Made by a program: the position numbers and the translations under genes
In this document: piece by piece, positions 831 to 50,445 of the stretch
Numbering within the stretch: the first letter of the stretch is position 1
Layout of the letters: every line of letters begins with the position of its first letter
NCBI RefSeq assembly: GCF_006345805.1
Contig: NW_021834961.1
Coordinates: 1-52,148, forward strand
Direction of reading: 5' to 3'
From: Octopus sinensis
Lineage: Eukaryota
Length of the DNA stretch: 52,148 nucleotides
Notes under the pieces: model-generated
Databases searched by the model: none
Seen by the model: the letters and a program-made list of their open reading frames with translations, nothing else
Told to the model about the DNA's origin: nothing

Positions 831-1033
831 TTTCCATCCTACACACAAATGCACTCACAGACTCTCGTAAGCACTGAGACACTCTCATTCACACACTGAA
901 AAGGCGCGAGTGAGTGAAGAAGAGACTGACTTCAGAAGGAAGAAAGGTAGGTTATTATGGAGGCAGGTAGGTTAGTAAGAAATTCAGTACAAATGGAATG
1001 GAATCAAATCGAATGGAATCAAATATAACTTAC

Positions 1034-5243: not shown

Positions 5244-5597
5244 ATAAAATGTTAATAACATTTACATACTTAGAAGCCCCCCAACAGGCTTATAAGTAAG
5301 AGCTGAATCAAGTTTCTGCTGCTTGGTAAGCGAAGAAAGAAAAGAGCCAAGGGCCTAACTGATCCGACTTCAACTACTAAATATCTATCATCTGCTGAGA
5401 AGATGTGAATTATCTGGCAGAGATCAAAAATAGAACAGCTTAAAATTGCAGGAACCACAATTTATAGATGTCTAATTTAGGAAGATGGAATGGCAGGCAT
5501 GCTGAAGTCTTAATTTGTAATGCAGTCACATAGCAAATTATATGTGTAGAAACATGTGTGTGTATGTGTGTCCGTCCGTCCGTCCATCCATCAATCC

Positions 5598-5630
<33 letters not shown>

Positions 5631-5678
5631 ATATGCACATATATACATATGCATACATACAAACATACATATGCAAAT

Positions 5679-5708
<30 letters not shown>

Positions 5709-5709
<1 letters not shown>

Positions 5710-6102
5710 GGCACAGGATGGCTGTGTGGTAAGTATCTTGCTTACCAACCACATGGTTCTGGGTTCAGTCCCACTGCGTGGCACCTTGGGCAAGTGTCTT
5801 CTACTATAGCTTCGGGCCGACTAAAGCTTTGTGAGTGGATTTAGTAAACGGAAACTGAAAGAAGCCTGTCGTGTATATATATATATATATATATATTGTG
5901 TGTGTGTCTGTGCTTGTCCCCCCCCCCCAACATCACTTGACAACCGACGCTGGTGTGTTGTACCCGTAACTTAACGGTTTGGCAACAGAGACCAATAGAA
6001 TAAGTACTAGGCTTACAAAAAATAAGTCCTGGGTTCGATTTGCTTGACTAAAGGCGGTGCTCCAGCATGGCCGCTGTCAAATGACTGAAACAAGTAAAAG
6101 AG
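5709..6102 (+). mobile_element. tRNA-derived CORE-type SINE with an internal microsatellite
   Basis: Head GGCACAGGATGGCTGTGTGGTAAG, GGGTTCAGTCCC, GCGTGGCACCTTGGGCAAGTGTCTT, internal (TA)n(TG)n, tail GAAACAAGTAAAAGAGT. Confidence 0.82.
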
Positions 6103-6366: not shown

Positions 6367-8179
6367 TACAAATGTATGCATGAATATGTAGGTATATGTA
6401 TACTTGGGTGTGCAAGCATTTTTGTGCCCTTAAGAAATCTGCTTTGCAACCACATAGCTTCTAGTTCAGTGCCACTGCATGGCACCTTGGGTGAGTGTTT
6501 GCTACAATAGCTACATGCAAATCAAAGATTTGTGAGAAAATTTAGTAAATGTAAACTACAGGGCATCTGCCATGTATGTGTGTGTATATATATTTATATA
6601 TATATACACATACATATGTATACATGTGCATATGTATGTATTTATATACACACGTATACATACGTACACATGTATGTACATATATATATATATACACACA
6701 CACACAATTAAGCATATACAAACAGACACACATATGTACATACACATATATATGATTATGATGACGATCAGCATTGATGGTAACCATGAAAATGATGATG
6801 ATTGTGATGATGATGATGATGATAAATGATGGCAGGTATATTTCAAATGTGATTAAAATCAAATAAACCAAGCAGTCTGTTGGCAACTGAAGGCTCCGTG
6901 TATAAAACGCATCAGGAGAGATAAGCAACATTGCTATTTACATATATTGGAAACAGATTACAAATGTATGGTGATTAGTGACTGATGATTGATAACCAGT
7001 GGCTGGTAATTGGCAATTGGTGACTGATGAGGGATTTCTGATGGTGCAAGAATTAAAGTTGATTGGTGATTGATGATAATTATTAATGAGTGATGATTGA
7101 ACAAGGATTGGTGAACAGGGACTGACAGCTGACAAATGGTGTTTGATGAATGATTACCTATACATCCTAATTTTTTCAAAATCTACTGCACAGACGCAGT
7201 CCTTCGCCGGCAATGAAAATATGCCAACTTTTAAAAACCGAAAATTATCCAAAAACTTACAATATTTAATCATATCAAAGGGAAATGGAAATTCAAAGGG
7301 CAGCACAAGCGTTTTGTGGTTTGGAATCACAAGTTTGGTGCCAATGATGAATAACAACACGAAATTAGCTCTTCACAAATCATTTGTGTTACCATCCCAC
7401 CACTGCTTGACAGGTGGCGTTGATATTTATGGGCCTCCAACTTGACATGAAAATAAGTAATGAAGTCAATTTATTCAACTAAAGCCTTTTTTCAAGGTGG
7501 TGCCCCAGCATGGCTACAGCCTAATGACTAAAGTGAGTAAAAGATAGAAGATAATGAATGAGTAACAGGAGACTCTTGTTGAAACCAGAATCATCGCAGA
7601 AAAACAAAAACAAACAAAAGCACAGCTCAATATTAAAATATAAGCGGCTTTATAAAAGTAATGAATTATTTTTTACTTCTATTAAACCCCAGAGAAGTTG
7701 TAATCATTTCTGTTGATAACATAATTTCGCTTTTATTTTTCTCCTCATTTATTTATATTCGTTTATATTTTATTTCATTTCGCAGTTTTTTTTTTTTTTC
7801 CTTTTTTTTTTCTTTCGATTTTTGTTTTCGTTCTGTCCCCCCAACCCCAACCGTGTTAATTTGTCCTCCTCGGAGAAGTACCAAAACTCTCTCTTCTCAA
7901 GAACTGACGTCAGAAAAAGAACAACGGATGTTTTAATCCAAATAAAAGCTAGATAAACTTGTGTTGTTGTTCTTTGTCTCATTATCACGTATAAACAGCT
8001 TCAAAGTAGCAATGCTAAAATTAAAAACAACGAGAAAAACACAGACAAAACCGAAAAGAAAAACACACAAAACAGAATGACGACATCACAGAGATTGAAA
8101 CGAAGATATCAATATCATACATCTCGACAAATACATTCCAAATTAATGCAGAACAGCTGTAGCATGCGTGTGCATATGC

Positions 8180-8554
8180 GTACGTTGATATGAAGTTATG
8201 AATACCTGTCTGAGAGTATATAAATACGTATGCATGTCCTTGTGCGTGCATATATATACACATATGAATACATATATAAATACACATGTACATATATACA
8301 TATGTATACATGTACATATATGCACATACATATATATATACATATATATAAACACACACACATATATATACATATATATACACACATATATATACATATA
8401 TATACACACATATATATACATATATATACATATATATATATATACACATATATACATATATATATATATACACACATATATATACATATATATACATATA
8501 TATAACACACATATATATACATATATATACATATATATACAATATATATATATA

Positions 8555-8638
<84 letters not shown>

Positions 8639-8766
8639 ATACATAATATATAATACATATATATATATATATATACATAATATATATATATATACACATA
8701 TATACATATATATATACATAATATATATATACATAATATATATATATATTATATATATACATACAC

Positions 8767-8799
<33 letters not shown>

Positions 8800-8828
8800 C
8801 ATACATATATACATACATATATACATAC

Positions 8829-8860
<32 letters not shown>

Positions 8861-8885
8861 TATATATATATATATATAATATATG
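8180..8885. repeat. (TA)n/(TACA)n microsatellite field
   Basis: Direct inspection; source of the Y/I/M/C-rich pseudo-ORFs. Confidence 0.95.
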
Positions 8886-9227
8886 AGTGACCCCCTTCGG
8901 TCAGACACTGACCATGGGTTTGCACCTAGAGAGTTGCCCTCTGAGGCACAAGTCTGGGCAAGGTTGTTTTTTATGGAAGACCAGCAGTCGCCCATGCACA
9001 CTGGCCTCCCCTCTCCACGTCACCGATGTTGTCCAAGGGAAAGGCAAGGGCCGATACAGCTTGGCACCTGTGACGTCGCAACTCATTTCTACAGCTGTGT
9101 GAACCGGAGCAACGTGAAATAAAGTGTCTTGCTCAAGAACACAACATGCAGCCCGGTCCGGGATTCGAGCTCACAACCTCACGATTGTAAGCTCAACGCT
9201 CTAACCCCTGAGCCACGCGCCTTCACT
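8885..9227 (-). mobile_element. tRNA-derived SINE, second CORE-type family
   Basis: Minus-strand head GGCGCGTGGCTCAGGGGTTAGAGCG (A box) and GCTCGAATCCC (B box), then GTGTTCTTGAGCAAGACACTTT. Sister copies at ~15205-15545 and 16625-16965. Confidence 0.8.
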
Positions 9228-14723: not shown

Positions 14724-14776
14724 CAGAAATATTAAATTTCTAAGTATCTCATAGAGATATGTATGGTGGTAGGGCG

Positions 14777-15179
14777 ATAGAATGGTTATATACTGTCAAT
14801 TTAACGTGACAGTGGGAGATTACACCACCGCTGTTTAGCCCTAGGAAGCATCGATGCTTCCTGATGGCTTCGACACATTTTTTCCTGTGTCCTTATATAC
14901 ATTTACGAAGGGGAGACAAACACCCCCAGCAGCCAGGCCTTCATCTAGAGACACGCATGTTTCAGGATCTTTGTCCATCATCGGTCTAGATCCTGAAACA
15001 TGCGTGTCTCTAGATGCAGGCCTGGCTGCTGGGGGTGTTTGTCTCCCCTTCGTAAATGTATATAAGGACACAGGAAGAAAAAATGCGTCAAAGCCATCAG
15101 GAAGCGTTGATGCTTCCTAGGGCTAAACAGGTGTAATCCCCTACTGTCACGTTAAATTGACAGTATACAACCATTCTAT
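14777..15179. mobile_element. ~400-bp fold-back (inverted repeat) of a Penelope-like terminal repeat
   Basis: Arms 14777-14970 and 14988-15179 are near-perfect reverse complements around a 17-nt spacer. A hammerhead motif spans the centre. A half-copy lies at 24050-24257. Confidence 0.75.
14943..14991 (-). ncRNA. Variant minimal type I hammerhead ribozyme (U4C core)
   Basis: AUCUAGA-CCGAUGA-U-GGA(caaaga)UCC-U-GAAAC-AUGCGU-GUC^UCUAGAU. It has a 7-bp stem I, a near-palindromic stem III and a predicted cut between 14950 and 14949. Confidence 0.65.
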
Positions 15180-16092
15180 GTATATATATATATATATATC
15201 TTACTAAGGGTAAAGACCCCCTTTGGTCATGAATGACCATGGGTCTGTATCTAGAAAATTCTCCTCCAAGGCACAAGTCCAGGCAAGGTTGCTTATGGAA
15301 GACCAGCAGTCGCCCATGCATACTAGCATCTTCTCTCTCCATGCCACCAATATTATCCAATGCAAAGACAAAGGCTGATACAGCTTGGCACCAGTGATGT
15401 CACAACTCATTTCTACAGCTGAGTGAACTGGAGCAACGTGAAATAAAGTGTCTTGCTCAAGAGCACAACACACAGCCCAGTTTGGGAATTGAATTCACTA
15501 CCTCATGATTGTGAGCCTGATGCTCTACCACTGAGCCATGTGCCTTCAATACATATACACACATACACACACACACACACACATACACATAACAGGGTTC
15601 CATACAGTTTCTGTCAACCAGATTCACTCACAAGGCATTAGTTGGCCCAAGGCCATAGTAGAAGACATTTGTCCAAAGAGCAGAGCAGTGGGACTGAACT
15701 CAAAACCACATGGTCTTAAAGCAATTATCTTAACCCAATTACCATTCCACCCCCGCCCCCCAGTTTGAATCTTGCAGAAATAGATTATCCGGTTAAATTG
15801 CTTCAGGACCCCTGTAAACAAGTACCAGTAAAAACGCTACAGATGATGTTAAACAATCAAATCAACTATAATATATGACATTTTACTCATTTACTTGCTT
15901 CAGTCATTTGACTGTGGCCATGCTGGAGCACCGACTTTAGTCGAGGAAATCGACCCCGGGACTTATTCTTTGTAAGCCTAGTACTTATTCTATCGGTCTT
16001 TTTTGCCGAACCGTTAAGTTACAGAGACATAAACACACCAGCATCGGTTGTCAAGCGATGTTGGAGGGAGGACAAACACAACAAACAAACAT

Positions 16093-16140
<48 letters not shown>

Positions 16141-16357
16141 CAGAAATATTAAATTTCTAAGTATCTCATAAGATATGTATGGTGGTAGGGCGATAGAATG
16201 GTTATATACTGTCAATTTAACGTGACAGTGGGAGATTACACCACCGCTGTTTAGCCCTAGGAAGCATCGATGCTTCCTGATGGCTTCGACACATTTTTTC
16301 CTGTGTCCTTATATACATTTACGAAGGGGAGACAAACCCCCCAGCAGCCAGGCCTTC

Positions 16358-16406
16358 ATCTAGAGACACGCATGTTTCAGGATCTTTGTCCATCATCGGT
16401 CTAGAT
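16358..16406 (-). ncRNA. Second copy of the variant hammerhead, inside the duplicated fold-back 16193-16592
   Basis: Same 49-nt sequence as 14943-14991. Confidence 0.65.
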
Positions 16407-16589
16407 CCTGAAACATGCGTGTCTCTAGATGCAGGCCTGGCTGCTGGGGGTGTTTGTCTCCCCTTCGTAAATGTATATAAGGACACAGGAAGAAAAAATG
16501 CGTCGAAGCCATCAGGAAGCGTCGATGCTTCCTAGGGCTAAACAGGTGTAATCCCCTACTGTCACGTTAAATTGACAGTATACACCATC

Positions 16590-16624
<35 letters not shown>

Positions 16625-17521
16625 TACTAAGGGTAAAGACCCCCTTTGGTCATGAATGACCATGGGTCTGTATCTAGAAAATTCTCCTCCAAGGCACAAG
16701 TCCAGGCAAGGTTGCTTATGGAAGACCAGCAGTCGCCCATGCATACTAGCATCTTCTCTCTCCATGCCACCAATATTATCCAATGCAAAGACAAAGGCTG
16801 ATACAGCTTGGCACCAGTGATGTCACAACTCATTTCTACAGCTGAGTGAACTGGAGCAACGTGAAATAAGTGTCTTGCTCAGAGCACAACACACAGCCCA
16901 GTTTGGGAATTGAATTCACTACCTCATGATTGTGAGCCTGATGCTCTACCACTGAGCCATGTGCCTTCAATACATATACACACATACACACACACACACA
17001 CACATACACATAACAGGGTTCCATACAGTTTCTGTCAACCAGATTCACTCACAAGGCATTAGTTGGCCCAAGGCCATAGTAGAACATTTGTCCAAAGAGC
17101 AGAGCAGTGGGACTGAACTCAAAACCACATGGTCTTAAAGCAATTATCTTAACCCAATTACCATTCCATCCACCTCCACCCCCGCCCCCCAGTTTGAATC
17201 TTGCAGAAATAGATTATCCGGTTAAATTGCTTCAGGACCCCTGTAAACAAGTACCAGTAAAAACGCTACAGATGATGTTAAACAATCAAATCAACTATAA
17301 TATATGACATTTTACTCATTTACTTGCTTCAGTCATTTGACTGTGGCCATGCTGGAGCACCGACTTTAGTCGAGGAAATCGACCCCGGGACTTATTCTTT
17401 GTAAGCCTAGTACTTATTCTATCGGTCTTTTTTGCCGAACCGTTAAGTTACAGAGACATAAACACACCAGCATCGGTTGTCAAGCGATGTTGGAGGGAGG
17501 ACAAACACAACAAACAAACAT

Positions 17522-17566
<45 letters not shown>

Positions 17567-18478
17567 TACGACAGGCTTCTTTCAGTTTCCGTCTACCAAA
17601 TCCACTCACAAGGCTATAGTAGAAGACACTTGCTCAAGGTGCCACGCAGTGAGACTGAACCCGGAACCATGTGGTTCGTAAGCAAGCTACTTACCACACA
17701 GCCACTCCTACGCCTATTATTCAGAATTGTTTTTGATCTTGTACCAACTCTAGAAACCATTGTTGTTTTTGTAATTAGAGTGGTACGGAGGTTTTTGGTG
17801 AAGTGGTTACACTGTTGCACTCATGACCCTAAAATTATAGTTTCAATTTCCGAACCATGTGTCCTTGAGCAAAAAACTTCATTTTCATAACATTGCTCCG
17901 GTCCATTCTATTGGCATAAATGAGTAATCCTGTGATGGACTGGCGTCCCATCCAGGGGAGGAATATATATAATAAAGAATGTGGAAAATTGGCCTTATGA
18001 GCCAACGGCTCAGGGAAGAAGCTAAGGCTAAGGCTTAATTAGGGTAGTACATTAGTATAATGAGTAGGGCATTAGACAAAGTACACTGGCAGCAGCAGCA
18101 GCAACACTAACAACAGTTACAATAATGAGCAAATGAAAGACCCTTTATAGAATCACCTGATGTGCTAGAAATAACAATTGAATGTCACTCAAATCACACC
18201 CATTTGTCTTAACTTTTTAGCATTTAGATTGCTGTGTCAAATGTAATACTTATTTATCCACATTGTTCTGAATTAATCATGCATTATCCTGTAGCTTTGA
18301 GATTTCAGTGATGTGATTGTTTATTTTGAGAAAGATATTGTTGGCCAAGTGTGAAAGACTGGATCTATCTAGTTTGAAGATAAAACAGGTAGATTATTTT
18401 GGCCAGATAAGACTGGTTTAAATGCTAAAGGATTCAATAAAGAAAAACCACATTGGATAGCACATGTTGTCCTAAGTA

Positions 18479-23356: not shown

Positions 23357-23919
23357 AGTTGCATCTACTTATCACCTAATAAGACACATCTGCACCGCCG
23401 GAAGCTCCTGAGCCAATTGTTGAGTGTCTTGCCCATGAGAGAATGATGCTAGATGTGTCAAAACAATTGTCGTGATTAATAAAAGTCAAAATCAAATTCG
23501 ATGACTGGCATCCGTGCAAGTGGAGCGCTAAGAGCACCATCCAAGTGTAATCGTTGCCAGAGCAGCAAACAGGCTTCTGTGCCGGAGGCACGTAAAAAGC
23601 ACCATTCGAGCATGATCGTTACCAGCGTTGCCAGTGGCACATGAAAAAACATTCGAGCGAGGTCGTTGCCAGTCCCACTGGACTGGCTCCTGTGCAAGTG
23701 GCACTTAAAAAACACCATTTGAATGTGGCCGTTGCTAGTACCGTCTGACACCCACTACTAAAAGCACCCACTACACTCTCGGAATGGTTGGCATTAGGAA
23801 GGGCATCCAGCTGTAGAAACTCTGCCAGATCACATTAGAGTTTGGTTTGCCAGACCCCAATCAAATTGTCCAACCCATGCTAGCATGGAAAGTGAGCATT
23901 AAACAAAACGATGATGATG

Positions 23920-23951
<32 letters not shown>

Positions 23952-23954
<3 letters not shown>

Positions 23955-24257
23955 TGATTTTGGTGATCAGTGAATAAACTTCACTGAAAATTAGATCTAT
24001 ATATTTACGAAGTCGAGATGGATATCTGCAGCTAGCAGGCTTCTGCTACTCTAGACCAATGATGGGCAAAGACCCTGAAACATGCGTGTCTCTAGATGCA
24101 GGCCTAGCTGTTGGGGGTGTTTGTCTCCTCTTCGTAAATATATAAGGACACAGGAAATGTGTCGAAGCCGACAGGAAGAGTCGATGCTTCCTAGGGCTAA
24201 ACAGCAGTGGTATAATCCCCTACTGTCACGTTAAATTGACAGTATACAACCATTCTA
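23952..24257 (+). mobile_element. Penelope-like terminal fragment with a variant hammerhead at 24050-24096
   Basis: Homologous to the arms of 14777-15179 and ends at the same CCATTCTAT followed by (TA)n. Motif UCUAGA-CCAAUGA-U-GGG(caaaga)CCC-U-GAAAC-AUGCGU-GUC^UCUAGA. Confidence 0.7.
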
Positions 24258-24924
24258 TATATATATATATATATATAGACGGGAAGGATGACTTCCCTTT
24301 GCAAATACTGACAGGACACAGAAAGTGTGTCTATGGCCAGCTGGAGGAGTGTGTCCTCCTGGGGCTAAAAACTACAGTAGCATCCACCCTTAGGGGTTAG
24401 CCATATTGAAATGGCAAAAATACGTCACGATGTGTTAACCGCTACTGTATATAACTCACTTTGATATTTATCATTGTTTGATTCACTTTTTCAAATATCA
24501 GTGACAGTGGGCGCTGGAAAAAGTATAAGTATTTGTGAAGGAAATCTAATTCTCGGCGACAACTATGATTGTCACACGCTGACAAGAGGTCAATACCTCG
24601 AAACTCGAGTCCGTGTGTATCATAAGTTGAAGACAGGAAGGATGACTTCCCTTTGCAATACTGACAGGACACAGAAAGTGTGTCTATGGCCAGCTGGAGG
24701 AGTGTGTCCTCCTGGGGCTAAAAACTACAGTAGCATCCACCCTTAGGGGTTAGCCATATTGAAATGGCAAAAATACGTCACGATGTGTTACCGCTACTGT
24801 ATATAACTCACTTTGATATTTATCATTGTTTGATTTCACTTTTTCAATATCAGCGACAGTGGGCGCTGGAAAAAGTATAAGTATTTGTGAAGGAAATCTA
24901 ATTCTCGGCGACAACTATGATTGT

Positions 24925-24969
24925 CACACGCTGACGAGAGGTCAATACCTCGAAACTCGAGTCCGTGTG
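24925..24969 (+). ncRNA. Canonical type I hammerhead ribozyme (representative intact copy)
   Basis: CACACG-CUGACGA-GAGG(ucaaua)CCUC-GAAAC-UCGA-GUC^CGUGUG. All core nucleotides are present, with a 6-bp stem I, 4-bp stem II and palindromic ACUCGAGU stem III. Predicted cut after 24963. Confidence 0.93.
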
Positions 24970-27401
24970 TATCATAAGTTGAAGACGGGAAGGATGACTT
25001 CCCTTTGCAAATACTGACAGGACACAGAAAGTGTGTCTATGGCCAGCTGGAGGAGTGTGTCCTCCTGGGGCTAAAAACTACAGTAGCATCCACCCTTAGG
25101 GGTTAGCCATATTGAAATGGCAAAAATACGTCACGATGTGTTACCGCTACTGTATATAACTCACTTTGATATTTATCATTGTTTGATTTCACTTTTTCAT
25201 ATCAGCGACAGTGGGCGCTGGAAAAAGTATAAGTATTTGTGAAGGAAATCTAATTCTCGGTGACAACTATGATTGTCACACCTGACAAGAGGTCAATACC
25301 TCTCGAAACTCGAGTCCGTGTGTATCATAAGTTGAAGACAGGAAGATGACTTCCCTTTGCAAATACTGACAGGACACAGAAAGTGTGTCTATGGCCAGCT
25401 GGAGGAGTGTGTCCTCCTGGGCTAAAAACTACAGTAGCATCCACCCTTAGGGGTTAGCCATATGAAATAGCAAAAATACGTCACGATGTGTTACCCAGCT
25501 ACTGTATATAACTCACTTTGATATTTATCATTGTTTGATTTCAACTTTTTTTCAATATCAGCGACAGTGGGCGCTGGAAAAAGTATAAGTATTTGTGAAG
25601 GAAATCTAATTCTCGGTGACAACTATGATTGTCACACGCTGACAAGAGGTCAATACCTCGAAACTCGAAACTCGAGTCCGTGTGTATCATAAGTTGAAGA
25701 CAGGAAGGATGACTTCCCTTTGCAAATACTGACAGGACACAGAAAGTGTGTCTATGGCCAGCTGGAGAGTGTGTCCTCCTGGGGCTAAAAACTACAGTAG
25801 CATCCACCCTTAGGTGTTAGCCATATTGAAATGGCAAAAATACGTCACGATGTGTTACCCGCTAGTGATATAACTCACTTTGATATTTATCATTGTTGTT
25901 TGATTTCACTTTTTCAATATCAGCGACAGTGGGCGCTGGAAAAAGTATAAGTATTTGTGAAGGAAATCTAATTCTCGGCGACAACTATGATTGTCACACG
26001 CTGACGAGAGGTCAATACCTCCTCGAAACTCGAGTCCGTGTGTATCATAAGTTGAAGACGGGAAGGATGACTTCCCTTTGCAAATACTGACAGGACACAG
26101 AAGTGTGTCTATGGCCAGCTGGAGGAGTGTGTCCTCCTGGGGCTAAAAACTACAGTAGCATCCACCCTTAGGGTTAGCCATATTGAAATGGCAAAAATAC
26201 GTCACGATGTGTTACCGCTACTGTATATAACTCACTTTGATATTTATCATTGTTTGATTTCACTTTTTCAATATCAGCGACAGTGGGCGCTGGAAAAAGT
26301 ATAAGTATTTGTGAAGGAATCTAATCTCGGCGACAAGTATGATTGTCACACGCTGACGAGAGGTCATACCTCGAAACTCGAGTCCGTGTGTATCATAAGT
26401 TGAAGACGGGAAGGATGACTTCCCTTTGCAAATACTGACAGGACACAGAAAGTGTGTCTATGGCCAGCTGGAGGAGTGTGTCCTCCTGGGGCTAAAAACT
26501 ACAGTAGCATCCACCCTTAGGGGTTAGCCATATTGAAATGGCAAAAATACGTCACGATGTGTTACCGCTACTGTATATAACTCACTTTGATATTTATCAT
26601 TGTTTGATTTCACTTTTTCAATATCAGCGACAGTGGGCGCTGGAAAAAGTATAAGTATTTGTGAAGGAAATCTAATTCTCGGTGACAACTATGATTGTCA
26701 CACGCTGACAAGAGGTCAATACCTCGAAACTCGAGTCCGTGTGTATCATAAGTTGAAGACAGGAAGGATGACTTCCCTTTGCAAATACTGACAGGACACA
26801 GAAAGTGTGTCTATGGCCAGCTGGAGGAGTGTGTCCTCCTGGGGCTAAAAACTACAGTAGCATCCACCCTTAGGGGTTAGCCATATTGAAATAGCAAAAA
26901 TACGTCACGATGTGTTACCGCTACTGTATATAACTCACTTTGATATTTATCATTGTTTGATTTCACTTTTTCAATATCAGCGACAGTGGCGCTGGAAAAA
27001 GTATAAGTATTTGTGAAGGAAATCTAATTCTCGGTGACAACTATGATTGTCACACGCTGACAAGAGGTCAATACCTCGAAACTCGAGTCCGTGTGATCAT
27101 AAGTTGAAGACAGGAAGGATGACTTCCCTTTGCACAATACTGACAGGACACAGAAAGTGTGTCTATGGCCAGCTGGAGGAGTGGTCCTCCTGGGGCTTAA
27201 AAACTACAGTAGCATCCACCCTTAGGTGTTAGCCATATTGAAATGGCAAAAATACGTCACGATGTGTTACCGCTACTGTATATAACTCACTTTGATATTT
27301 ATCATTGTTGATTTCACTTTTTCAATATCAGCGACAGTGGGCGCTGGAAAAAGTATAAGTATTGTGAAGGAAATCTAATTCTCGGCGACAACTATGATTG
27401 T

Positions 27402-27446
27402 CACACGCTGACGAGAGGTCAATACCTCGAAACTCGAGTCCGTGTG
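27402..27446 (+). ncRNA. Canonical type I hammerhead ribozyme (intact copy); intact cores also at 25995-26042, 26347-26390 and 27756-27799
   Basis: Same sequence as 24925-24969. The 26347 and 27756 copies have a 5-nt loop 2; the 25995 copy has a CCT duplication in stem II. Confidence 0.9.
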
Positions 27447-28139
27447 TATCATAAGTTGAAGACGGGAAGGATGACTTCCCTTTGCAAATACTGACAGGAC
27501 ACAGAAAGGTGTCTATGGCCAGCTGGAGGAGTGTGGGTCCTCCTGGGGCTAAAAACTACAGTAGCATCCACCCTTAGGGGTTAGCCATATTGAAATGGCA
27601 AAAATACGTCACGATGTGTTACCGCTTACTGATATAACTCACTTTGATATTTATCATTGTTTGATTTCACTTTTTCAATATCAGCGACAGTGGGCGCTGG
27701 AAAAAGTATAAGTATTTGTGAAGGAAATCTAATTCTCGGCGACAAGTCTGATTGTCACACGCTGACGAGAGGTCATACCTCGAAACTCGAGTCCGTGTGT
27801 ATCATAAGTTGAAGACGGGAAGGATGACTTCCCTTTGCAAATACTGACAGGACACAGAAAGTGTGTCTATGGCCAGCTGGAGAGTGTGTCCTCCTGGGGC
27901 TAAAAACTACAGTAGCATCCACCCTTAGGGGTTAGCCATATTGAAATGGCAAAAATATGTCACGATATAGAATATATATATATATATATATATATATCTA
28001 TATATATATATCTATATATATATATATATATATATGAATGAGAAAAAGCACAAAGGGAAAATGAATACAAATGGGACAACCAAGTAGTTTTCATCTCATT
28101 GGTTATCCAGACCTAGGAATTTGCAGTTTCAGCATTTAA

Positions 28140-28162
28140 GATGTGTCATCTGTGTTTGTGTG

Positions 28163-28197
<35 letters not shown>

Positions 28198-28215
28198 GTC
28201 ATTTGTGTTTGTGTG

Positions 28216-28246
<31 letters not shown>

Positions 28247-28398
28247 TGTGTGTCATCTGTGTTTGTGTGTGTGTTGTGTGTGTGTGTGTCATCTGTGTTT
28301 GTGTGTGTTTGTGTGTGTGTGTGTGTCATCTGTGTGTGTGTGTGTGTGTGTGTGTCATCTGTGTTTGTGTGTGTGTGTGTGTGTGTGTCATCTGTGTT

Positions 28399-28429
<31 letters not shown>

Positions 28430-28562
28430 CATCTGTGTGTGTGTGTGGGTGTGTGTGTGTCATCTGTGTTTGTGTGTGTGTGTGTGTGTGTCATCTGTGT
28501 GTCTGTGTGTGTGTGTGTGTGTGTGTGTCTGTGTGTCTGTGTGTGTGTGTCTGTGTGTGTGC
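28140..28562. repeat. (TG)n microsatellite punctuated by TCATCTG
   Basis: Direct inspection; source of the C/V-rich pseudo-ORFs. Confidence 0.92.
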
Positions 28563-30607: not shown

Positions 30608-30674
30608 AATATTCACCACTCGTGTTCGACATCTCCTTTTTTTAAATATACATATTTATATACATATACATATA

Positions 30675-30706
<32 letters not shown>

Positions 30707-31651
30707 CATATACATATATATATATACATATACATATATATACATATATATACATACATATATACACACATATATATATAAGGGTTTGGTTGGTCCAAGG
30801 GTATAGCAGAAGACACTTGCCCAAGGTGCCAAACAGTGAGACTGAACCTGGAACCACGTGATAAGGGAAGGAAGCTTCTTACCACACAGTCATATCTTGA
30901 AAAACAAACGTAAATGTTATGCAGTAATTGGTTACGTTGTGCATGCAGTATTTGTTCCATCCGAATTGGACAGATACTCCCTTGTCGCTCTCGCTGTACA
31001 TAAATGACATGAACCAGGGATTGGCCTGATGGAATCCAACCCTGCCCCTCCCTCCCGCCTCTTCTCCCCTCCCCAACGGTGCTATTGTTTGTAAAATGCA
31101 TAATATAAAGTAGAATGTAACTGGATGCTATTTGTTGGCTGCTGGGGGAACGGCTAGAAAAGTGCACCAGAAAGAAATGAAGGAAAGAAAAAAAATAGAG
31201 TCACAACAAAATTAACCAAAAGCAAAAACACACACACAAAAAAAAACAGTAAAACCCCGATCAATAATTAGTGCATGTCAAACTAATTATATAAACAATG
31301 TTGTTTATTCGAGCCTGTCTTTCTATTGCTTCGTTATGTCTCAGTCTCTTCTCTCTCTCTCTCTCTCTATCTCTCTCTCAATGTCTATCCACCTCTCTTT
31401 TTCTATCAGTTTATATCCTCCTCTCTTATTTTTTCTGTCTCTCTCTCTCTTCTCTCTTTCAAGTTCTATCTTACCCTCTTTCTTTTTCTCTCTTGCGCTT
31501 TTCCATTCAGCTTGTAGTCTCATCTTTCACTCTCTCTCTCTCTATCTCCCTCTCTTCCTATCTCTGTCAGTCCTTATTGTATTTCTTCTGTCTGTCTCTC
31601 ACCCAGTTTTTTTCCACATTCTCCATATATATATATATATATATATAAATA

Positions 31652-32048: not shown

Positions 32049-32295
32049 CACGTCTCTCTCACCCCCATATATACCTCAGTCTCTGTAGTCTCTCTTACTC
32101 ATTTTTATTGCTTCTTCATCCCCATCTTTCTCTCTCTCTCTTCTCTCTGACTCCCTCCCTTATATAGCAATATATATATAAGGGAGGGAGTCCAGAGAGA
32201 GAGAGAGAGAGAGAAAGACAGCAGTTTTACAAGTGTTTGAGAGCAAGAATCAATTTGTTAAGTAATTGCAGTTATTGTGATGCCATAACAGTCAC

Positions 32296-33075: not shown

Positions 33076-33314
33076 ATTTCGGAATGGTCATTTTGCCAGT
33101 TTAGCCAATAAAAACACACGCACTATATATTTGGTGTTATTTTGCTTCAGTGTTATTTATTTTTTACATTAATCTTAATCTTATTTCGGCCAGAGTTCTT
33201 CATCACACTCCTGTAAGATTAATGTAAAAAATAAATAACACTGAAGCAAAATAACACCAAATATATAGTGCGGGTGTTTTATTGGCTAAACTGGCAATAT
33301 GACCATTCCGAAAT
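33076..33314. repeat. ~240-bp inverted repeat (arms ~101 bp, 36-nt spacer)
   Basis: Arms 33076-33177 and 33214-33314 are reverse complements with about 2 mismatches and 1 indel. Confidence 0.9.
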
Positions 33315-33607
33315 AATAATATTGTTTCAACACACACGACTTCACATAAAAAATCTTGCACAACAAATATTTAAATGTACTATATATATATATAATATAT
33401 ATATATATATATACACACATATATATATAGGAGAGGCTGTGTGGTAAGTAGTTGCTTACCACCAACCACATGGTTCCAGGTTCAGTCCCACTGCATGGCA
33501 CCTTGGGCAAGTGTCTTCTACTATAACCTCGGGCCGAGGTTATAGCCTTGTGAGTGGATTTGGTAGATGGAAACTGAAAGAAGCCCATCGCATGTATGGA
33601 AGTATAT

Positions 33608-33644
<37 letters not shown>

Positions 33645-33983
33645 TTATGTATGTATATATATATAATATGTATGTATGTGTGTGCGTGTATGTTTGTGTC
33701 TGTGTTTGTCCCCTCAACATTGCTTGAAAGAAGTAAAAGAGTAAAGAGTATTTATATGCACACACACACACACACACACGTGTGTATCTATGATAGTGTG
33801 TGTGTACTTCTGATAGCATGTGATGACTAAACGGGCATTATGCAAGCAAAGTTGTTTTTTTTTGTCTTCTATGAAGAAAAGAAAAAAAAGTGTCTGTGGG
33901 AAAATATAACTCTGGAAAAAGGTGAGCATTGGCAACAGGAAAGGCATATGGCCCTAGAAAATGTGCTTCAACAAATTCCATCT

Positions 33984-34365
33984 AACCACACGGTTCTCGG
34001 TTCAGTCCCACTGCGTGGCACCTTAGGCAAGTGTCTTCTACTATACCCTCGGGCCGACCAAAGCCTTGTGAGTGGATTTGGTAGACGGAAACCGAAAGAA
34101 GCCCGTTTTATATATGTATGTATGTATATATATATATATATGTGCATATGTTTCTGTGTTTGTGCTTGTACGCCCAACATCGCTTGACAACCGATGCTGC
34201 TGTGTTTACATCCCCCGTAACTTAGGGGTTCGGCTAAAGAGACCAATAGAATAAGTAATAGGCTTACAAAGAATAAAAGTCCTGCGGTCGATTTGCTCGA
34301 CTAAAGGCGGTGCTCCAGCATGGCCGCAGTCAAATGACTGAAACAAGTAAAAGAGTAAAAGAAAA
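33984..34365 (+). mobile_element. CORE-type SINE with an internal microsatellite (slightly 5'-truncated)
   Basis: Same family as 5709-6102; another partial copy lies at ~33430-33720. Confidence 0.8.
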
Positions 34366-39784: not shown

Positions 39785-41028
39785 TTGTGTGTCTGTGTTT
39801 GTCCCCTACCATCGCTTGACAACCGATGTTGGCATGTTTACAAACTCACTAACTTAGCAGTTCAGCAAAAGAGACTGATAGAATAAATACTAGGATTACA
39901 AAGAATAAGTCCTGGGGTCAATTTGTTCGACTAAAGGCGGTGCACCAAACTGGTGTTGGTGTAATTATGTCCCTATAACTTAGCAGTTTGACAAAAGACT
40001 GATAGAATGAGTTCTAGGCTTTAAAATGTAAATACTGAGATCGATTCATTTGGCTAAGATTCCTCAAGGTGGTCCTCCAGCATGGTCGTAGACTAATGAC
40101 TGAAACAAGTGAAGACAAAGACATCATGATGCAAACAAAAAATATAATTATAAAAACTAACGCCATCCCTACTAGAAGGGGAAGATTCCAAGGCAACTCT
40201 TCCTCCTCTCTCTCTCATTCCTTCTCTGTATTTCCTCACAGTCAGATGTTAAAACCTTCAACCAGCTTGTCAAAGCTGTCTGAACTCACACGTAAATGTT
40301 ATGGGAAAATATAATCATCTGCATTTGGATGACAAAGAGTTGTACTCTGCAGGTGATAGAAAATTTGCAACCAGAAACACAGCTACAGATACTTTATGGA
40401 TTTACTAGATGAGGTGATGCAAGACAGTGTCGAGTCAAATTTCATGAGTAGAAAATTCAGGAACATTGATATTCATCATCATCATCATCATTTAGCGTCC
40501 GCTTTCCATGCTAGCATGGGTTGGACGGTTCAACTGGGGTCTGGGAAGTCAGGAGGCTGCACCAGGCCCAGTCTGATCGGGCAATGTTTCTATGGCTGGA
40601 TGCCCTTCCTAATGCCAACAACTCTGTGAGTGTAGTGGGTGCTTTTTACGTGCCACCGGCGCAGGTGCCAGACGGAGCTGGCAAACAGCCACGGTCGGAT
40701 GGTGCTTTTTACGTGCCACAGGCACGGGGGCCAGGCAAGGCTGGCAAACGGCCATGGTCGAATGGTGCTTTTTACGTGCCACCGGCACTGATATCACAGC
40801 TGCAATTTCCATTGGTGTTGATCGATTTCGATTTTGATTTATGTTTAGTAAAGAACAAGAGATAAGAGAACTGAAACAAACACTAAATTACAAATAGTTA
40901 AGAATCAGTAACCGTACAATACACAAATAGAGGAAAACATCAGGAAGGAATATCATAAATCATTAAAATAATATTTAAAACAACTAAAAGATATTTTAAG
41001 GAAGATTTGAAAGGGTATTTGATCCATA

Positions 41029-41193
41029 GGCGCAGGAGTGGCTGTGTGGTAAGTAGCTTATTTACCAACCACATGTTTCCGGGTTCAGTCCCACTGCGTG
41101 GCACCTTGGGCAATTGTCTTCTACTATAGCCTCGGGCCGACCAAAGCCTTGTGAGTGGATTTGGTAGATGGAAACTGAAAGAAGCCTGTCGTA

Positions 41194-41231
<38 letters not shown>

Positions 41232-41450
41232 TGTGTGTGTTTGTGTGTCTGTGTTTGTCCCCCTAGCATTGCTTGACAACCGATGCTGGTGTGTTTACGT
41301 CCCCATCACTTAGCGGTTCGGCAAAAGTGACCGATAGAATAAGTACTGGGCTTACAAAAGAATAAGTCCTGGGGTCGAGTTGCTTGACTAAAGGCGGTGC
41401 TCCAGCATGGCCTCAGTCAAATGACCGAAACAAGTAAAAGAGTAGAGTAA
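41029..41450 (+). mobile_element. Full-length CORE-type SINE with an internal microsatellite
   Basis: GGCGCAGGAGTGGCTGTGTGGTAAG head through the GTAAAAGAGT tail. Confidence 0.85.
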
Positions 41451-44248: not shown

Positions 44249-45131
44249 GGTGATGGTGGGAGAAGGAAGAAGGATCATAAAATTGAATTAGGATAGGATG
44301 ATGATCATTCAAGACCTGTTAGAAAAAAAGTTTTTGTTTTTTTTTATTCGAAAAAAAAAAAAGTGAATATTACTGTTGAATACAGTTTTAAAAATTTATT
44401 ATATTAAAAATTAAAATACGAATTTAAGAAACTGACATAAAAGAAGAAGGAGAAGGAAAAGATGAAGATATGTAAGAAGGAAACATATAAGAAAGACGAA
44501 GGAAAAGAATGATTCCTCATGAGAAGATATTTACCCAAAGGTGTAACAGTTAATTTTTTCTGACTCTATTTTTCATGAGCAGCAACATAATTAAAAGAAA
44601 ATAGAAAAATAAAGCAAGAAATTCCTGTTTCGCTTATTAATAATAATAATTGTTTCTAATTTAGGCAGAAAGTGAGCAATTTCGAGACAAGGGTGTTAAC
44701 TGATACCATCGACTCCGGTACTCGACTGGTATTTTACTCCATGAACCCCCGCCATAGTAATGACAATAATAACACAATTGTTTCCAGTTTAGGAACATGG
44801 TCAACAGATTTTTGAAGGGAGGTGACAAGGCAAAACCCCAGTATTTGACTGCTACTAAGTCAAACACATGTGTATATATGTGTATACATGTATATATATA
44901 TATATATATGTATGTTTTATGTATGTACATATGTGTCATCATCATCATCATCGTTTAACGTCCGCTTTCCATGCTGGCATGGGTTGGACGGTTCAACTGG
45001 GGTCTGGGAAGCCAGAAGGCTGCACCAGGCCCAGTCTGATCTGGCAGTGTTTCTACGGCTGGATGCCCTTCCTAACGCCAACCACTCCGTGAGTGTAGTG
45101 GGTGCTTTTTACGTGCCACCCGCACTGTGTG

Positions 45132-45172
<41 letters not shown>

Positions 45173-45596
45173 TTGTATGTGTTATATATATATATATATT
45201 ATATATATATATATATATTATACACGTATGTATGTATGTATGTACATGTATATATGTATGAATACATGTGAGTCCATGTGTGTGTGTATGTATGTATATG
45301 TATGTGTGTGTGTGTGTATATGTATCGATAAATAGAGATAGGGAGTGAGTGTGTGGGCAAGTTGGAGAGGGGCAACTGAATGCTAAAGGCTGAAAAGCTC
45401 ATTGAAATTAGCAGTTATCTGACAACAAAGTCAACTTTAGACAAGGTCACTTGGTATTTTCAGTGAAAAGATCATCTTCTGGCTCTGTGCTTCCAAACAC
45501 ATGGAAGTATAAACAATCCCTTACTTCAAAAATTGATCCAAGTCAGTACCACGAAGTGTACCATGCTGTGAAACAAAAACCTGGCTAAAATGTAAC

Positions 45597-49410: not shown

Positions 49411-50242
49411 CTAACCATCCACTGAGCCATCAAATAAACAGCAGAAGCTATTAAATATAGTACCTACTTTAAAAAGAAAAAAATAAGCTCAAAGCTGCTC
49501 TTTGAGTTGATGCGTTTGAAAGATGAAAGAGATAAAAGTTAAAAACTCGTTAAGTTTTAATTTTACTTATTAACAATTACTTTTACAGTGAAACCATCAT
49601 TCCAATATTAACAGTTGTGTTATAATATGAAGTTCAGGATTAAAAAATTAACAGACCAAAGTTATTCCCTCTAGTTAATAATATAATATTCTATTTCAGA
49701 TATATTTGTATATTTTGATTTAAGGATAAAAAATTTCCTTTTGAATTAACTTCAATATTTCTTAACTGGCTTTCAGGCATATTATTATATATTAACTGTA
49801 ATAAGGCTGGTTAAGTCATTTAATTAATTACTTTATAATATTATCACCCAATTTTTTTTTTAAGGCAGAGTATAGCAATATTAAGGAAGGGTGGCCATTA
49901 CTCAGGGGTCTATTTTAAGAAGTAGTCATATTTTAATATTGCCAATACATCTTATGGCGAAGTGGGCAGTAGGGTGGAAGGGAAAAAGGAGCAGGGGTTG
50001 TTCAGCTTATATGAATACTTGCATATCAAAAATTTGCTATACTATCAGGTTTTCCAATTATATGCAATAATATTCAACACCTGAGGACAATTCAAGTAGG
50101 ATATTTGAATAGTAGATTCAATTGTGGAACTAGTATTCAAATAGCGTGTAGATGTAAATGTGCATGTATATATATTCATACACAACCCCCACACACATAT
50201 ATGAATATACATGGATATTTATAATACAAATGTACATATATA

Positions 50243-50414
50243 GGCGCAGGAGTGGCTGTGTGGTAAGTAGCTTTGCTTGCCAACCACATGGTTCCGGGTT
50301 CAGTCCCACTGCGTGGCACCTTGGGCAAGTGTCTTCTACTATAGCCTCGGGCCGACCAAAGCCTTGTGAGTGGATTTGGTAGACGGAAACTGAAAGAAGC
50401 CCGTCGTATATATG

Positions 50415-50445
<31 letters not shown>

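What the first reader, a model, noticed from the sequence alone, without database searches (positions are those of the whole stretch)
24277..27966. Octopus retrozyme: 10 tandem ~353-nt units, each with a canonical type I hammerhead ribozyme
Each unit contains CACACG-CUGACGA-GAGG(UCAAUA)CCUC-GAAAC-UCGA-GUC^CGUGUG. Stem I extends through an internal loop (CAACUAUGAU-ugu-CACACG pairing with CGUGUG-u-AUCAUAAGUUG), the arrangement that allows stem I/loop 2 tertiary contacts in natural type I hammerheads. A read-through transcript would self-process into ~353-nt monomers able to circularise. Tandem genomic copies are the expected product of rolling-circle reverse transcription. The layout matches newt satellite 2, Schistosoma Sm-alpha, cricket pDo500 and the metazoan non-LTR retrozymes. 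The array starts ~20 nt past a cut site, ends mid-unit, has no protein-coding capacity and is inserted in (TA)n. I do not know of a description of this family in cephalopods but could not search. It is antisense to the SRRM gene, so it would not cut that pre-mRNA.
Basis: partly seen in the sequence, partly recalled or inferred. Interest (0 to 1): 0.92.

Follow-up and report, generated by a model that had tools for sequence, protein, structure and literature searches.

The report
Octopus hammerhead-ribozyme tandem retroelement (retrozyme)
A 3.7-kb block of ten ~352-base repeats in an octopus-like genome carries a self-cutting "hammerhead" RNA motif in every repeat (intact in only half), and is an ordinary new example of the known animal "retrozyme" type of mobile DNA.

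Summary
The array is real: 24277-27966, period 352, 10.4 copies, 96% identity, non-coding, 42.5% GC, embedded in (TA)n. Every unit has a type I hammerhead motif on the + strand. Only 5 of 10 keep the catalytic core CUGACGA, and only 2 are fully consensus. The other 5 carry G8A (CUGACAA), two of them with further damage. Rfam Hammerhead_1 scores the two best copies 32.2 bits, just under the gathering score of 34. The motif fits the published "canonical metazoan type I" layout: helix I 6 bp then an internal loop, helix II 4 bp, helix III 2 bp with a palindromic tetraloop. Folding predicts that it works as a double hammerhead between neighbouring units.

I also found a second, diverged family ("B") with three copies in the window. 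Its hammerhead keeps helices I and II through compensatory changes. Its copies show insertion features typical of Penelope-like elements: (TA)n targets, 5' truncation and inverted head-to-head copies. They share a 3' terminus that lines up with the point where the array ends.

Best reading: a non-LTR retrozyme, a non-autonomous retroelement probably mobilised by Penelope-like elements. It is a new member of a known kind. No cleavage, circular RNA or genome-wide data could be obtained. The "antisense to SRRM" claim is not supported. Interest is moderate to low.

The parts
24277..27966 (+). Family A array: 10.4 head-to-tail units of about 352 nt. It starts at unit position 20/21 (counted from the cut site) and ends at 173/174. 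GC 42.5%, CpG observed/expected 0.70.
   Evidence: TRF; unit boundaries; nhmmer with the unit profile, E 1e-126 to 1e-137 per unit; composition
24573..24617 (+). Hammerhead motif of unit 0; core CUGACAA (G8 to A); predicted cut after 24611
24925..24969 (+). Hammerhead motif of unit 1; fully consensus; predicted cut after 24963
   Evidence: Rfam RF00163 32.2 bits, E 2.7e-5
25277..25322 (+). Hammerhead motif of unit 2; G8 to A, loss of the G that closes stem I, and a CU insertion after helix II; predicted cut after 25316
25633..25684 (+). Hammerhead motif of unit 3; G8 to A plus a 7-nt GAAACUC duplication; predicted cut after 25678
25995..26042 (+). Hammerhead motif of unit 4; core intact; 3-nt insertion (CCUCCUC) on the 3' side of helix II; predicted cut after 26036
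26347..26390 (+). Hammerhead motif of unit 5; core intact; loop 2 UCAUA (1 nt shorter); one change in distal stem I; predicted cut after 26384
26699..26743 (+). Hammerhead motif of unit 6; G8 to A; predicted cut after 26737
27051..27095 (+). Hammerhead motif of unit 7; G8 to A; the U of the 3' side of the internal loop is deleted; predicted cut after 27089
27402..27446 (+). Hammerhead motif of unit 8; fully consensus; predicted cut after 27440
   Evidence: Rfam RF00163 32.2 bits
27756..27799 (+). Hammerhead motif of unit 9; core intact; loop 2 UCAUA; two changes in distal stem I; predicted cut after 27793
24256..24276 (.). (TA)n directly left of the array. It also abuts the 3' end of B1.
   Evidence: sequence
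27967..28035 (.). ATAGA followed by (TA)32, directly right of the array
   Evidence: TRF 27972-28035; sequence
23953..24255 (+). B1: a single, diverged copy of under one unit length from a related family (about 62% identical to A, 88% to B2). It lies between (TA)15 and (TA)11 and carries a hammerhead-like motif at 24050-24096 with core CCAAUGA.
   Evidence: local alignment score 87 against shuffles 34.8 +/- 5.9; nhmmer E 1.3e-7
23922..23952 (.). (TA)15.5 on the left of B1
   Evidence: TRF
16196..16589 (-). B2: family B head-to-head pair, made of an inverted 5'-truncated copy joined to a direct copy. The hammerhead-like motif is at 16405-16359 with core CCGAUGA. Both outer ends read ...ACCAT(T)C next to TA.
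   Evidence: sequence; nhmmer; alignment; model R1 62 bits
14780..15176 (-). B3: a copy of B2 made by the 1.42-kb segmental duplication (98-99.6% identical to B2). The hammerhead-like motif is at 14990-14944.

Best explanation
The array is a genomic copy of a metazoan non-LTR retrozyme. That is a short, non-coding, non-autonomous retroelement whose RNA carries a type I hammerhead ribozyme, most likely mobilised by the reverse transcriptase and GIY-YIG endonuclease of Penelope-like elements (PLEs).

Proposed mechanism:
1. A read-through + strand transcript of several units folds so that the 8-nt palindrome ACUCGAGU (helix III plus its loop) of one unit pairs with that of a neighbour. This double hammerhead is predicted by folding but not tested.
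2. Each intact core (CUGACGA ... GAAA) then cuts after the GUC of its partner unit. Units with a dead G8-to-A core could therefore still be released if their neighbour is intact. This is inferred.
3. The ~352-nt monomers carry 5'-OH and 2',3'-cyclic phosphate ends. They close through the long stem I helix and are ligated into circles that no longer cleave well, because a lone helix III of 2 bp is unstable. This is inferred from the family's behaviour in coral, mussel and axolotl.
4. A PLE-type enzyme nicks (TA)n and starts cDNA synthesis at a fixed site about 173 nt downstream of the cut site. It copies more than one unit length and stops at a variable 5' point. The sequence shows the fixed 3' end, the variable 5' ends, the (TA)n targets and the inverted copies. 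The enzyme is inferred.

This particular array is partly decayed and was probably remodelled at the DNA level, because two linked variants alternate along it.
For: - Array and motifs.
- Hammerhead_1 is the only ribozyme family matched, E 2.7e-5.
- All core positions, the G10.1-C11.1 pair and the C1.1-G2.1 pair are present in the intact units (sequence).
- The layout equals the published canonical metazoan type I motif: helix I 6 bp, helix II 4 bp, helix III 1-2 bp with a palindromic loop, acting as a dimer in tandem repeats (PMC4209133).
- Size (352 bp), GC (42.5%), tandem form and lack of coding capacity fit the published retrozyme definition (PMC7229834).
- The monomer fold has z = -4.7 to -6.4, with stem I closing the molecule.
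- A lone 70-nt hammerhead prefers a non-catalytic fold (-23.1 against -17.2 kcal/mol). The homodimer minimum (-50.9) is the double hammerhead.
- In the real two-unit stretch 27375-27830, the minimum-energy fold pairs 27432-27439 with 27785-27792.
- Only the + strand has the motif.
- Family B is homologous in both search directions. It keeps helices I and II with 7 of 10 pairs changed on both sides: 96.7% of cells paired against 77% in shuffles and 19-69% when the partner columns are slid. B1 and B2 also differ from each other by a compensatory A-U/G-C change in helix II.
- Published PLE insertion hallmarks are 5' truncation, multicopy head-to-tail insertions, an inverted 5'-truncated copy and (TA)n targets (PMC8557442). 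All of these are seen in A, B1 and B2.
- The 3' ends of B1 and both arms of B2 are identical. The array ends within about 2 nt of the homologous point.
- Octopus origin is supported.
Against: - Rfam scores are below the gathering threshold (32.2 against 34), and only two copies appear even at E <= 10.
- Five of ten cores have G8 to A, and G8 is the proposed general acid (PMC6155905).
- There is no expression, cleavage or circular-RNA evidence of any kind.
- No second family A locus could be found. The collections I could search hold no matching DNA, and two sampled cephalopod-like loci have no copy.
- No PLE reading frame was seen in the window. The only RT fragment is LINE-like.
- Three CpG sites split about 50:50 in a linked, alternating pattern while ten others are intact. 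This points to DNA-level duplication, or to a heterogeneous multimeric template, rather than one circle copied ten times.
- The family B core has C at position 4, which is not canonical, so B may never have cleaved in this form.
- The A/B alignment near the 3' terminus is only about 45% identical.
Confidence: 0.8

Rival explanations
1. It is an ordinary satellite or local tandem repeat that grew only by DNA-level processes (unequal crossing-over, replication slippage). Its hammerhead is an inherited relic that is no longer used, and no retrotransposition of this array took place.
For: - Two linked variants (C...G and T...A at alignment columns 310/337) alternate as CG, TA, TA, CG, CG, TA, TA, CG, CG.
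- Several private variants recur at a spacing of 4 units.
- Ten of 13 CpG sites are intact, so recurrent CpG decay does not explain the pattern.
- Half of the cores are dead.
- A 1.42-kb segmental tandem duplication nearby shows that such DNA-level events happen in this region.
Against: - Mean distance at a lag of 4 units (12.6) is only slightly below that at a lag of 1 (15.5).
- The array sits inside (TA)n and ends at the point homologous to the shared 3' terminus of three family B copies.
- Related copies occur at separate sites and in inverted pairs, which needs transposition.
- DNA-level growth after a retrotransposition event is compatible with the main explanation.
Confidence: 0.1
2. The repeats are pseudo-LTR pieces of an autonomous Penelope-like element (a stack of solo pLTRs), not a separate non-autonomous family.
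For: - PLE pLTRs carry hammerheads and form tandem and inverted structures (PMC4209133; PMC8557442).
- A 2026 preprint finds vertebrate retrozymes to be sister to pLTRs (10.64898/2026.07.22.740005).
Against: - No reverse transcriptase or GIY-YIG reading frame adjoins any of the four copies.
- PLE hammerheads are usually minimal variants without helix III and without the loop interactions (PMC6155905). This motif is the canonical form with 6-bp helix I, 4-bp helix II and a palindromic helix III.
Confidence: 0.07
3. The elements are DNA transposons: foldback or MITE-like elements with long terminal inverted repeats and TA target duplications. The hammerhead resemblance would be incidental.
For: B2 and B3 are near-palindromes with arms of about 190 nt, flanked by TA on both sides.
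Against: - B1 and the family A array have no terminal inverted repeats.
- The arms of B2 are only 91% identical to each other.
- The hammerhead helices co-vary between the families.
- The array is head-to-tail, which cut-and-paste elements do not produce.
Confidence: 0.03

Closest known systems
Metazoan non-LTR retrozymes (Acropora, Mytilus, Ambystoma; Cervera & de la Pena 2020, PMC7229834)
   Same: - A type I hammerhead sits in head-to-tail repeats of a few hundred bp; the axolotl units are 330-350 bp.
- GC is low, there is no coding capacity, and there is no LTR, PBS or PPT.
- Helix III has 2 bp capped by a tetraloop, as described for invertebrate motifs.
- The monomer is highly structured.
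   Different: - The host is a cephalopod, and no paper I could search names a cephalopod retrozyme.
- Expression and circularity are untested here.
- Half of the cores in this array are inactivated.
Newt satellite 2 and the double-hammerhead mechanism (Epstein & Gall 1987; Forster et al. 1988, as cited in PMC6155905)
   Same: - It is a tandem repeat with one type I hammerhead per unit.
- A weak helix III with a palindromic loop is predicted to be active only when two copies pair.
   Different: - Helix III has 2 bp here, against 1 bp in the newt-type motif (PMC7229834).
- The sequences are unrelated outside the core.
Schistosoma Sm-alpha hammerhead (source of the Rfam RF00163 consensus)
   Same: - The core matches: CUGANGA, a 4-bp helix II with a 6-nt loop ending AAUA, then GAAAC.
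- Six base pairs of helix I are followed by an internal loop (alignment).
   Different: - Sm-alpha is a dispersed SINE-like element, not a long array.
- The helix sequences differ, which keeps the Rfam score just under threshold.
Penelope-like elements and their non-autonomous derivatives (Craig et al. 2021, PMC8557442; Li et al. 2026 preprint)
   Same: [quoted passage not shown]
- There may also be a one-sided tail: 56 nt after the direct copy of B2.
   Different: - No reverse transcriptase or endonuclease gene is present here.
- The hammerhead is the canonical form, not the minimal PLE form.
- Similarity of the 3' end to an autonomous octopus PLE was not tested.

Membership tests
Hammerhead ribozyme, type I (Rfam RF00163) | Conserved core C3 U4 G5 A6 N7 G8 A9 ... 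G12 A13 A14 ... A15.1-U16.1 ... H17 | tested here: met
   Complete in 5 of 10 units (24925, 25995, 26347, 27402, 27756). The other 5 have A at position 8.
Hammerhead ribozyme, type I (Rfam RF00163) | Three helices around the core, with helix I open and helices II and III closed by loops | tested here: met
   Rfam alignment; fold with the stems enforced. Helices I and II co-vary with family B.
Hammerhead ribozyme, type I (Rfam RF00163) | Score at or above Rfam's gathering threshold (34 bits) | tested here: not met
   The best two copies score 32.2 bits, E 2.7e-5. No hit at gathering threshold.
Hammerhead ribozyme, type I (Rfam RF00163) | Site-specific self-cleavage after H17 | not testable with these tools
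   Needs in vitro transcription of monomer and dimer constructs.
Canonical metazoan type I hammerhead (definition in PMC4209133) | Helix I 6 bp, helix II 4 bp, helix III 1-2 bp capped by a 2-4 nt palindromic loop | tested here: met
   CACACG/CGUGUG; GAGG/CCUC; AC/GU with loop UCGA. ACUCGAGU is a perfect palindrome.
Canonical metazoan type I hammerhead (definition in PMC4209133) | Conserved loop 1 / loop 2 nucleotides that make the tertiary contact | tested here: inconclusive
   An internal loop (UGU / U) follows 6 bp of helix I. Loop 2 UCAAUA shares AAUA with the Rfam consensus. The exact interacting residues could not be checked against a reference.
Canonical metazoan type I hammerhead (definition in PMC4209133) | Active form is a dimer of two neighbouring motifs | tested here: met
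   Prediction only. The homodimer minimum-energy fold is the double hammerhead (-50.9 against 2 x -23.1). The real two-unit stretch pairs the two helix III palindromes.
Metazoan non-LTR retrozyme (PMC7229834) | Type I hammerhead within short head-to-tail repeats (150-450 bp), from dimers to large multimers | tested here: met
   352 bp, 10.4 copies
Metazoan non-LTR retrozyme (PMC7229834) | Low GC (<45-50%); no LTR, PBS or PPT; no coding capacity | tested here: met
   GC 42.5%. ORFs are at most 90 aa and have no relatives. There are no terminal repeats other than the units themselves.
Metazoan non-LTR retrozyme (PMC7229834) | Transcribed and accumulated as small circular RNA | not testable with these tools
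Metazoan non-LTR retrozyme (PMC7229834) | Dispersed multicopy family in the genome, co-occurring with Penelope-like elements | tested here: inconclusive
   - Three independent insertions of two related families lie within 52 kb.
- No family A or B copy was found in 41 kb sampled elsewhere.
- No PLE gene is in the window.
- PLEs are reported in cephalopods (PMC8557442; PMC6962438).
PLE-type insertion (PMC8557442) | (TA)n or other microsatellite target; 5' truncation; head-to-tail multicopy; inverted 5'-truncated copy at the 5' end | tested here: met
   The array and B1 lie in (TA)n. The 5' ends vary while the 3' end is shared. B2 and B3 are inverted pairs.
PLE-type insertion (PMC8557442) | 3'-end similarity to an autonomous PLE of the same genome | not tested
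   No octopus PLE sequence was available to compare.
Plant LTR retrozyme (PMC4918200) | Type III hammerheads in two LTRs, with PBS and PPT, and 4-bp target duplications | tested here: not met
   The motif is type I, the array is multicopy, and there are no LTRs.
Viroid-like / Avsunviroidae-type replicon | Hammerheads in both polarities | tested here: not met
   There are no - strand hits in the array with Rfam or with model R1.

The most novel reading that the evidence does not exclude
The window holds three independent insertions of two related hammerhead families: the family A array, B1, and the B2 inverted pair. All abut TA. All end at the same internal point of the unit, about 173 nt downstream of the ribozyme cut site. 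Their 5' ends differ.

If a genome-wide census confirms this, retrozyme cDNA synthesis would start at a fixed internal site. A ribozyme-cut linear monomer cannot supply that site as a 3' end, so the template must be circular or multimeric. This would be direct genomic evidence for how PLE-type enzymes copy retrozymes. It would also give a natural case in which dead-core units are rescued in trans through double hammerheads.
Probability: 0.3. Interest if true: 0.55.

Novelty: new member of a known kind. Interest (0 to 1): 0.35.

Why it matters
Retrozymes are a recently defined class of mobile element that spreads through small circular RNAs made by a self-cutting ribozyme. They have been shown experimentally in a coral, a mussel and a salamander, and surveyed in vertebrates. 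A cephalopod member would extend the host range modestly. Octopus genomes are repeat-rich and their RNA is heavily edited, so an abundant structured circular RNA family would be worth knowing about. The more useful point is local. One 52-kb window shows a tandem array, a monomer and an inverted pair of two related families side by side, all in (TA)n and all ending at the same unit position. That makes the proposed link between retrozymes and Penelope-like integration testable by a simple genome-wide census.

Tried and rejected
- Exact and degenerate searches for the hammerhead sequence in the viral, metagenome and prokaryote genome collections found nothing. That is expected for a eukaryotic repeat.
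- A protein search with the 90-aa ORF inside the array, meant to pick up spurious ORFs called on other copies, found nothing.
- I sampled 20.9 kb of an Octopus vulgaris chromosome (L001) and 20.3 kb around an SRRM2-like exon on an ENA contig (L002). Neither holds a family A or B copy or a hammerhead. Sampling at random like this was not productive, so I stopped.
- The whole-window Rfam scan at E <= 1 was swamped by microRNA look-alikes from TA/TG microsatellites. It added only the two hammerhead hits.
- A higher-order repeat of 4 units is suggested by shared variants, but overall distances support it only weakly. I report it as a hint.
- A consensus fold of the 3' domain of A plus B was inconclusive because the alignment shifts.
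- Recurrent CpG decay as the cause of the G8-to-A pattern is rejected, because 10 of 13 CpG sites are intact in at least 9 of 10 units.
- ARAGORN found no tRNA-like part, so nothing points to a tRNA-derived SINE.
- A chance match is rejected: the strict pattern occurs 0 times in 100 shuffles.
Full report
**1. The observation**

Tandem Repeats Finder reports one array at 24277-27966: period 352, 10.4 copies, 96% matches, 2% indels. I cut the array at the predicted ribozyme sites. This gives a 335-nt first piece, nine full units of 348-362 nt and a 173-nt last piece.

Each unit holds one hammerhead-like motif on the + strand. A strict pattern, CTGANGA...GAAAC...GTC, matches five times, all inside the array, and never in 100 dinucleotide-preserving shuffles of the window.

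Rfam at gathering thresholds reports nothing in the window. With E-value reporting, Hammerhead_1 (RF00163) matches 24925-24969 and 27402-27446 over the full model. The score is 32.2 bits against a gathering score of 34, with E = 2.7e-5.

So the array and the motifs are real, but 'each unit canonical' is not:
- Two units are consensus.
- Three keep the core but have small changes in helix II, loop 2 or distal stem I.
- Five have CUGACAA instead of CUGACGA. That is G8 to A, and the 2'-OH of G8 is the proposed general acid (PMC6155905). Two of these five are damaged further.

**2. Anatomy of the motif**

In the intact units every core position is present. The pairs next to the core are also present: G10.1-C11.1 and C1.1-G2.1.
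- Helix I is CACACG/CGUGUG.
- Helix II is GAGG/CCUC with loop UCAAUA.
- Helix III is only A-U and C-G, capped by UCGA.

This is the published 'canonical metazoan type I' layout: helix I 6 bp, helix II 4 bp, helix III 1-2 bp with a small palindromic loop. That layout is stated to be poorly active alone and active as a dimer in tandem repeats (PMC4209133; Forster et al. 1988 as cited in PMC6155905).

The eight bases ACUCGAGU are a perfect palindrome. Folding supports the dimer mode:
- A lone 70-nt motif prefers a non-catalytic fold at -23.1 kcal/mol. The best fold with the hammerhead stems enforced reaches -17.2.
- The minimum-energy homodimer (-50.9) is the double hammerhead, with an 8-bp intermolecular helix III and swapped helices I.
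- In the real two-unit stretch 27375-27830, the minimum-energy fold pairs 27432-27439 with 27785-27792.

In a double hammerhead each core cuts the partner's site. By inference, a G8-to-A unit next to an intact unit could still be released.

**3. The unit as a whole**

- The consensus unit is 353 nt and 42.5% GC.
- Cut at the ribozyme site, it folds with z-scores of -4.7 to -6.4 against shuffles, linear or circular. Helix I and its extension close the molecule.
- The largest ORF in the array is 90 aa and has no relative in the 5.8-billion-protein collection.
- Only the + strand carries a hammerhead.

**4. Ends and flanks**

The array starts at unit position 20/21 after a cut site, directly after (TA)11. 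It ends at unit position 173/174, directly before ATAGA(TA)32. There are 1-2 nt of microhomology at each junction.

**5. A second family in the window**

A profile of the units finds three weaker matches outside the array:
- 24121-24222 on the + strand, E = 1.3e-7.
- 16369-16249 on the - strand, E = 7.3e-5.
- 14951-14833 on the - strand, E = 9.9e-5.

A profile built from these three hits the array units in return, with E from 9e-7 to 7e-5. I call these copies family B.

- **B1** (23953-24255, +) is a single copy of less than one unit length. It lies between (TA)15 and the (TA)11 that borders the array.
- **B2** (16196-16589, -) and **B3** (14780-15176, -) are head-to-head pairs: an inverted 5'-truncated copy joined to a direct copy. 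They are 98-99.6% identical because they sit in a 1.42-kb segmental duplication.

The family B motif reads UCUAGA | CCGAUGA | UGGA-CAAAGA-UCCU | GAA | ACA-UGCG-UGU | C | UCUAGA. This is type I architecture with different helix sequences, a U-U at the base of helix II, and C instead of U at core position 4.

Comparing the A and B motifs, 7 of the 10 pairs of helices I and II are changed on both sides. 96.7% of cells pair, against 77% in shuffles and 19-69% when the partner columns are slid. B1 and B2 differ from each other by one more compensatory change in helix II. Only two lineages are compared, so this reflects few independent events. It still argues that the hammerhead fold was under selection in the ancestry of both families.

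A covariance model built from both families finds only these 13 motifs in the 52 kb.

**6. Insertion signature**

The 3' ends of B1 and of both arms of B2 are the same...GACAGTATAYAACCAT(T)C, each followed by TA. In two independent MAFFT alignments, anchored on a homologous terminal hairpin, this terminus falls within about 2 nt of the point where the family A array ends...ATACGTCACGA followed by TATA. The alignment there is only about 45% identical, so the coincidence is approximate. A chance coincidence within 2 nt in a 353-nt unit would be roughly 1-2%.

Four features seen here are listed as hallmarks of Penelope-like element insertions (PMC8557442): a shared 3' end with variable 5' ends, head-to-tail multicopy insertion, an inverted 5'-truncated copy at the 5' side, and (TA)n targets. 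A 2026 preprint argues that animal retrozymes derive from PLE terminal repeats. A 56-nt unique stretch between the direct copy of B2 and the next (TA)n may be the one-sided 'tail' described for PLEs, but this is tentative.

The array's end is therefore probably the family's normal 3' terminus and not an arbitrary mid-unit break. Because this terminus is not the ribozyme cut site, the template would have to be circular or longer than one unit. That is inference.

**7. History of this array**

Of 13 CpG sites in the unit, ten are intact in at least 9 of 10 units. Three are split about evenly and are linked. One of these is the G8 site. They alternate along the array as CG, TA, TA, CG, CG, TA, TA, CG, CG. 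Several private variants also recur at a spacing of four units. Overall distances support a four-unit periodicity only weakly.

A single circle copied ten times would give identical units. The pattern therefore needs either later DNA-level duplication or a heterogeneous multimeric template. Rolling-circle reverse transcription remains possible but is not shown.

CpG observed/expected is 0.70 in the array against 0.51 in the rest of the window, which is consistent with a fairly young insertion.

**8. Host and context**

An RT fragment at 3200-3760 (-) has its best named matches in Octopus bimaculoides and O. vulgaris, at 72-89% identity. This supports an octopod origin.

The ORF at 1030-1482 (-) holds a cwf21 domain. 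It aligns from its internal Met (start codon 1359-1357) with the N-termini of SRRM2-type proteins. That gene runs towards lower coordinates, so the array lies 22.9 kb upstream of the coding start on the other strand. It is not antisense to the coding part of the gene. Whether it sits in a 5' UTR intron cannot be told.

**9. Comparison with what is known**

The element fits the definition of metazoan non-LTR retrozymes: a type I hammerhead in 150-450 bp head-to-tail repeats, low GC, and no LTR, PBS, PPT or coding capacity (PMC7229834). These have been shown to be circular RNAs in a coral, a mussel and the axolotl, and have been surveyed in vertebrates.

It is not a plant LTR retrozyme and not a viroid-like replicon with ribozymes in both polarities. 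Its hammerhead is the canonical form, not the minimal form usual in PLE terminal repeats.

I found no paper naming a cephalopod retrozyme. The giant squid genome paper does list 235 Rfam 'hammerhead 1' hits (PMC6962438), so the motif has been noted in cephalopods without being characterised.

**10. Limits**

No other family A locus, no RNA data and no octopus PLE sequence could be reached with these tools. Cleavage, circularity, mobility and copy number are all untested.

**Verdict**

This is a genuine hammerhead-bearing tandem retroelement and a new member of a known kind. It is partly decayed at this locus. The neighbouring family B copies are informative because they point to PLE-type integration from a fixed 3' site.

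Noticed in passing
window 14755-17474: A segmental tandem duplication of about 1.42 kb, two copies at 97-100% identity. It carries B2/B3 together with SINE-like sequence and microsatellites.
   Followed up: partly
window 1030-1482 (-): This is the first coding exon of an SRRM2-like gene, with a cwf21 domain and a start codon at 1359-1357. It has a 12-residue proline run and about 20 extra residues that are absent from the aligned homologues.
   Followed up: partly
window 3200-3760 (-): A LINE-type reverse transcriptase C-terminal fragment. It is 72-89% identical to Octopus bimaculoides and O. vulgaris proteins, some of which carry a PHD finger. I used it only to place the host.
   Followed up: partly
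window 5440-5793, 17477-17890, 30613-31167, 33286-33819, 33968-34246, 40940-41269, 50130-50492: A recurring short interspersed sequence translates as ...[26 protein letters not shown]..., on either strand, usually next to microsatellites. It is probably a SINE. ARAGORN finds no tRNA-like part.
   Followed up: no
window 23476-23900, 40521-40865, 44870-45271: Another repeated element with internal ~60-nt sub-repeats (translated: GAFYVPPA...). One copy lies just upstream of B1.
   Followed up: no
whole window, e.g. 8021-9001, 28151-28561, 32120-32223: TA, TG and CA microsatellites are very dense. They produce nearly 200 sub-threshold microRNA look-alike hits in Rfam, none reaching a gathering score.
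   Followed up: yes
window 16196-16589 (-): The two arms of the B2 inverted pair are only 91% identical, and the differences are mostly transitions. If both arms were copied in one event, this dates the insertion as much older than the family A array. An RNA of this form would be a ~190-bp hairpin.
   Followed up: no
window 16140-16195 (-) and 14724-14779 (-): A unique stretch of about 56 nt lies between the 3' end of the direct family B copy and the next (TA)n. It may be the one-sided 'tail' described for Penelope-like insertions.
   Followed up: no
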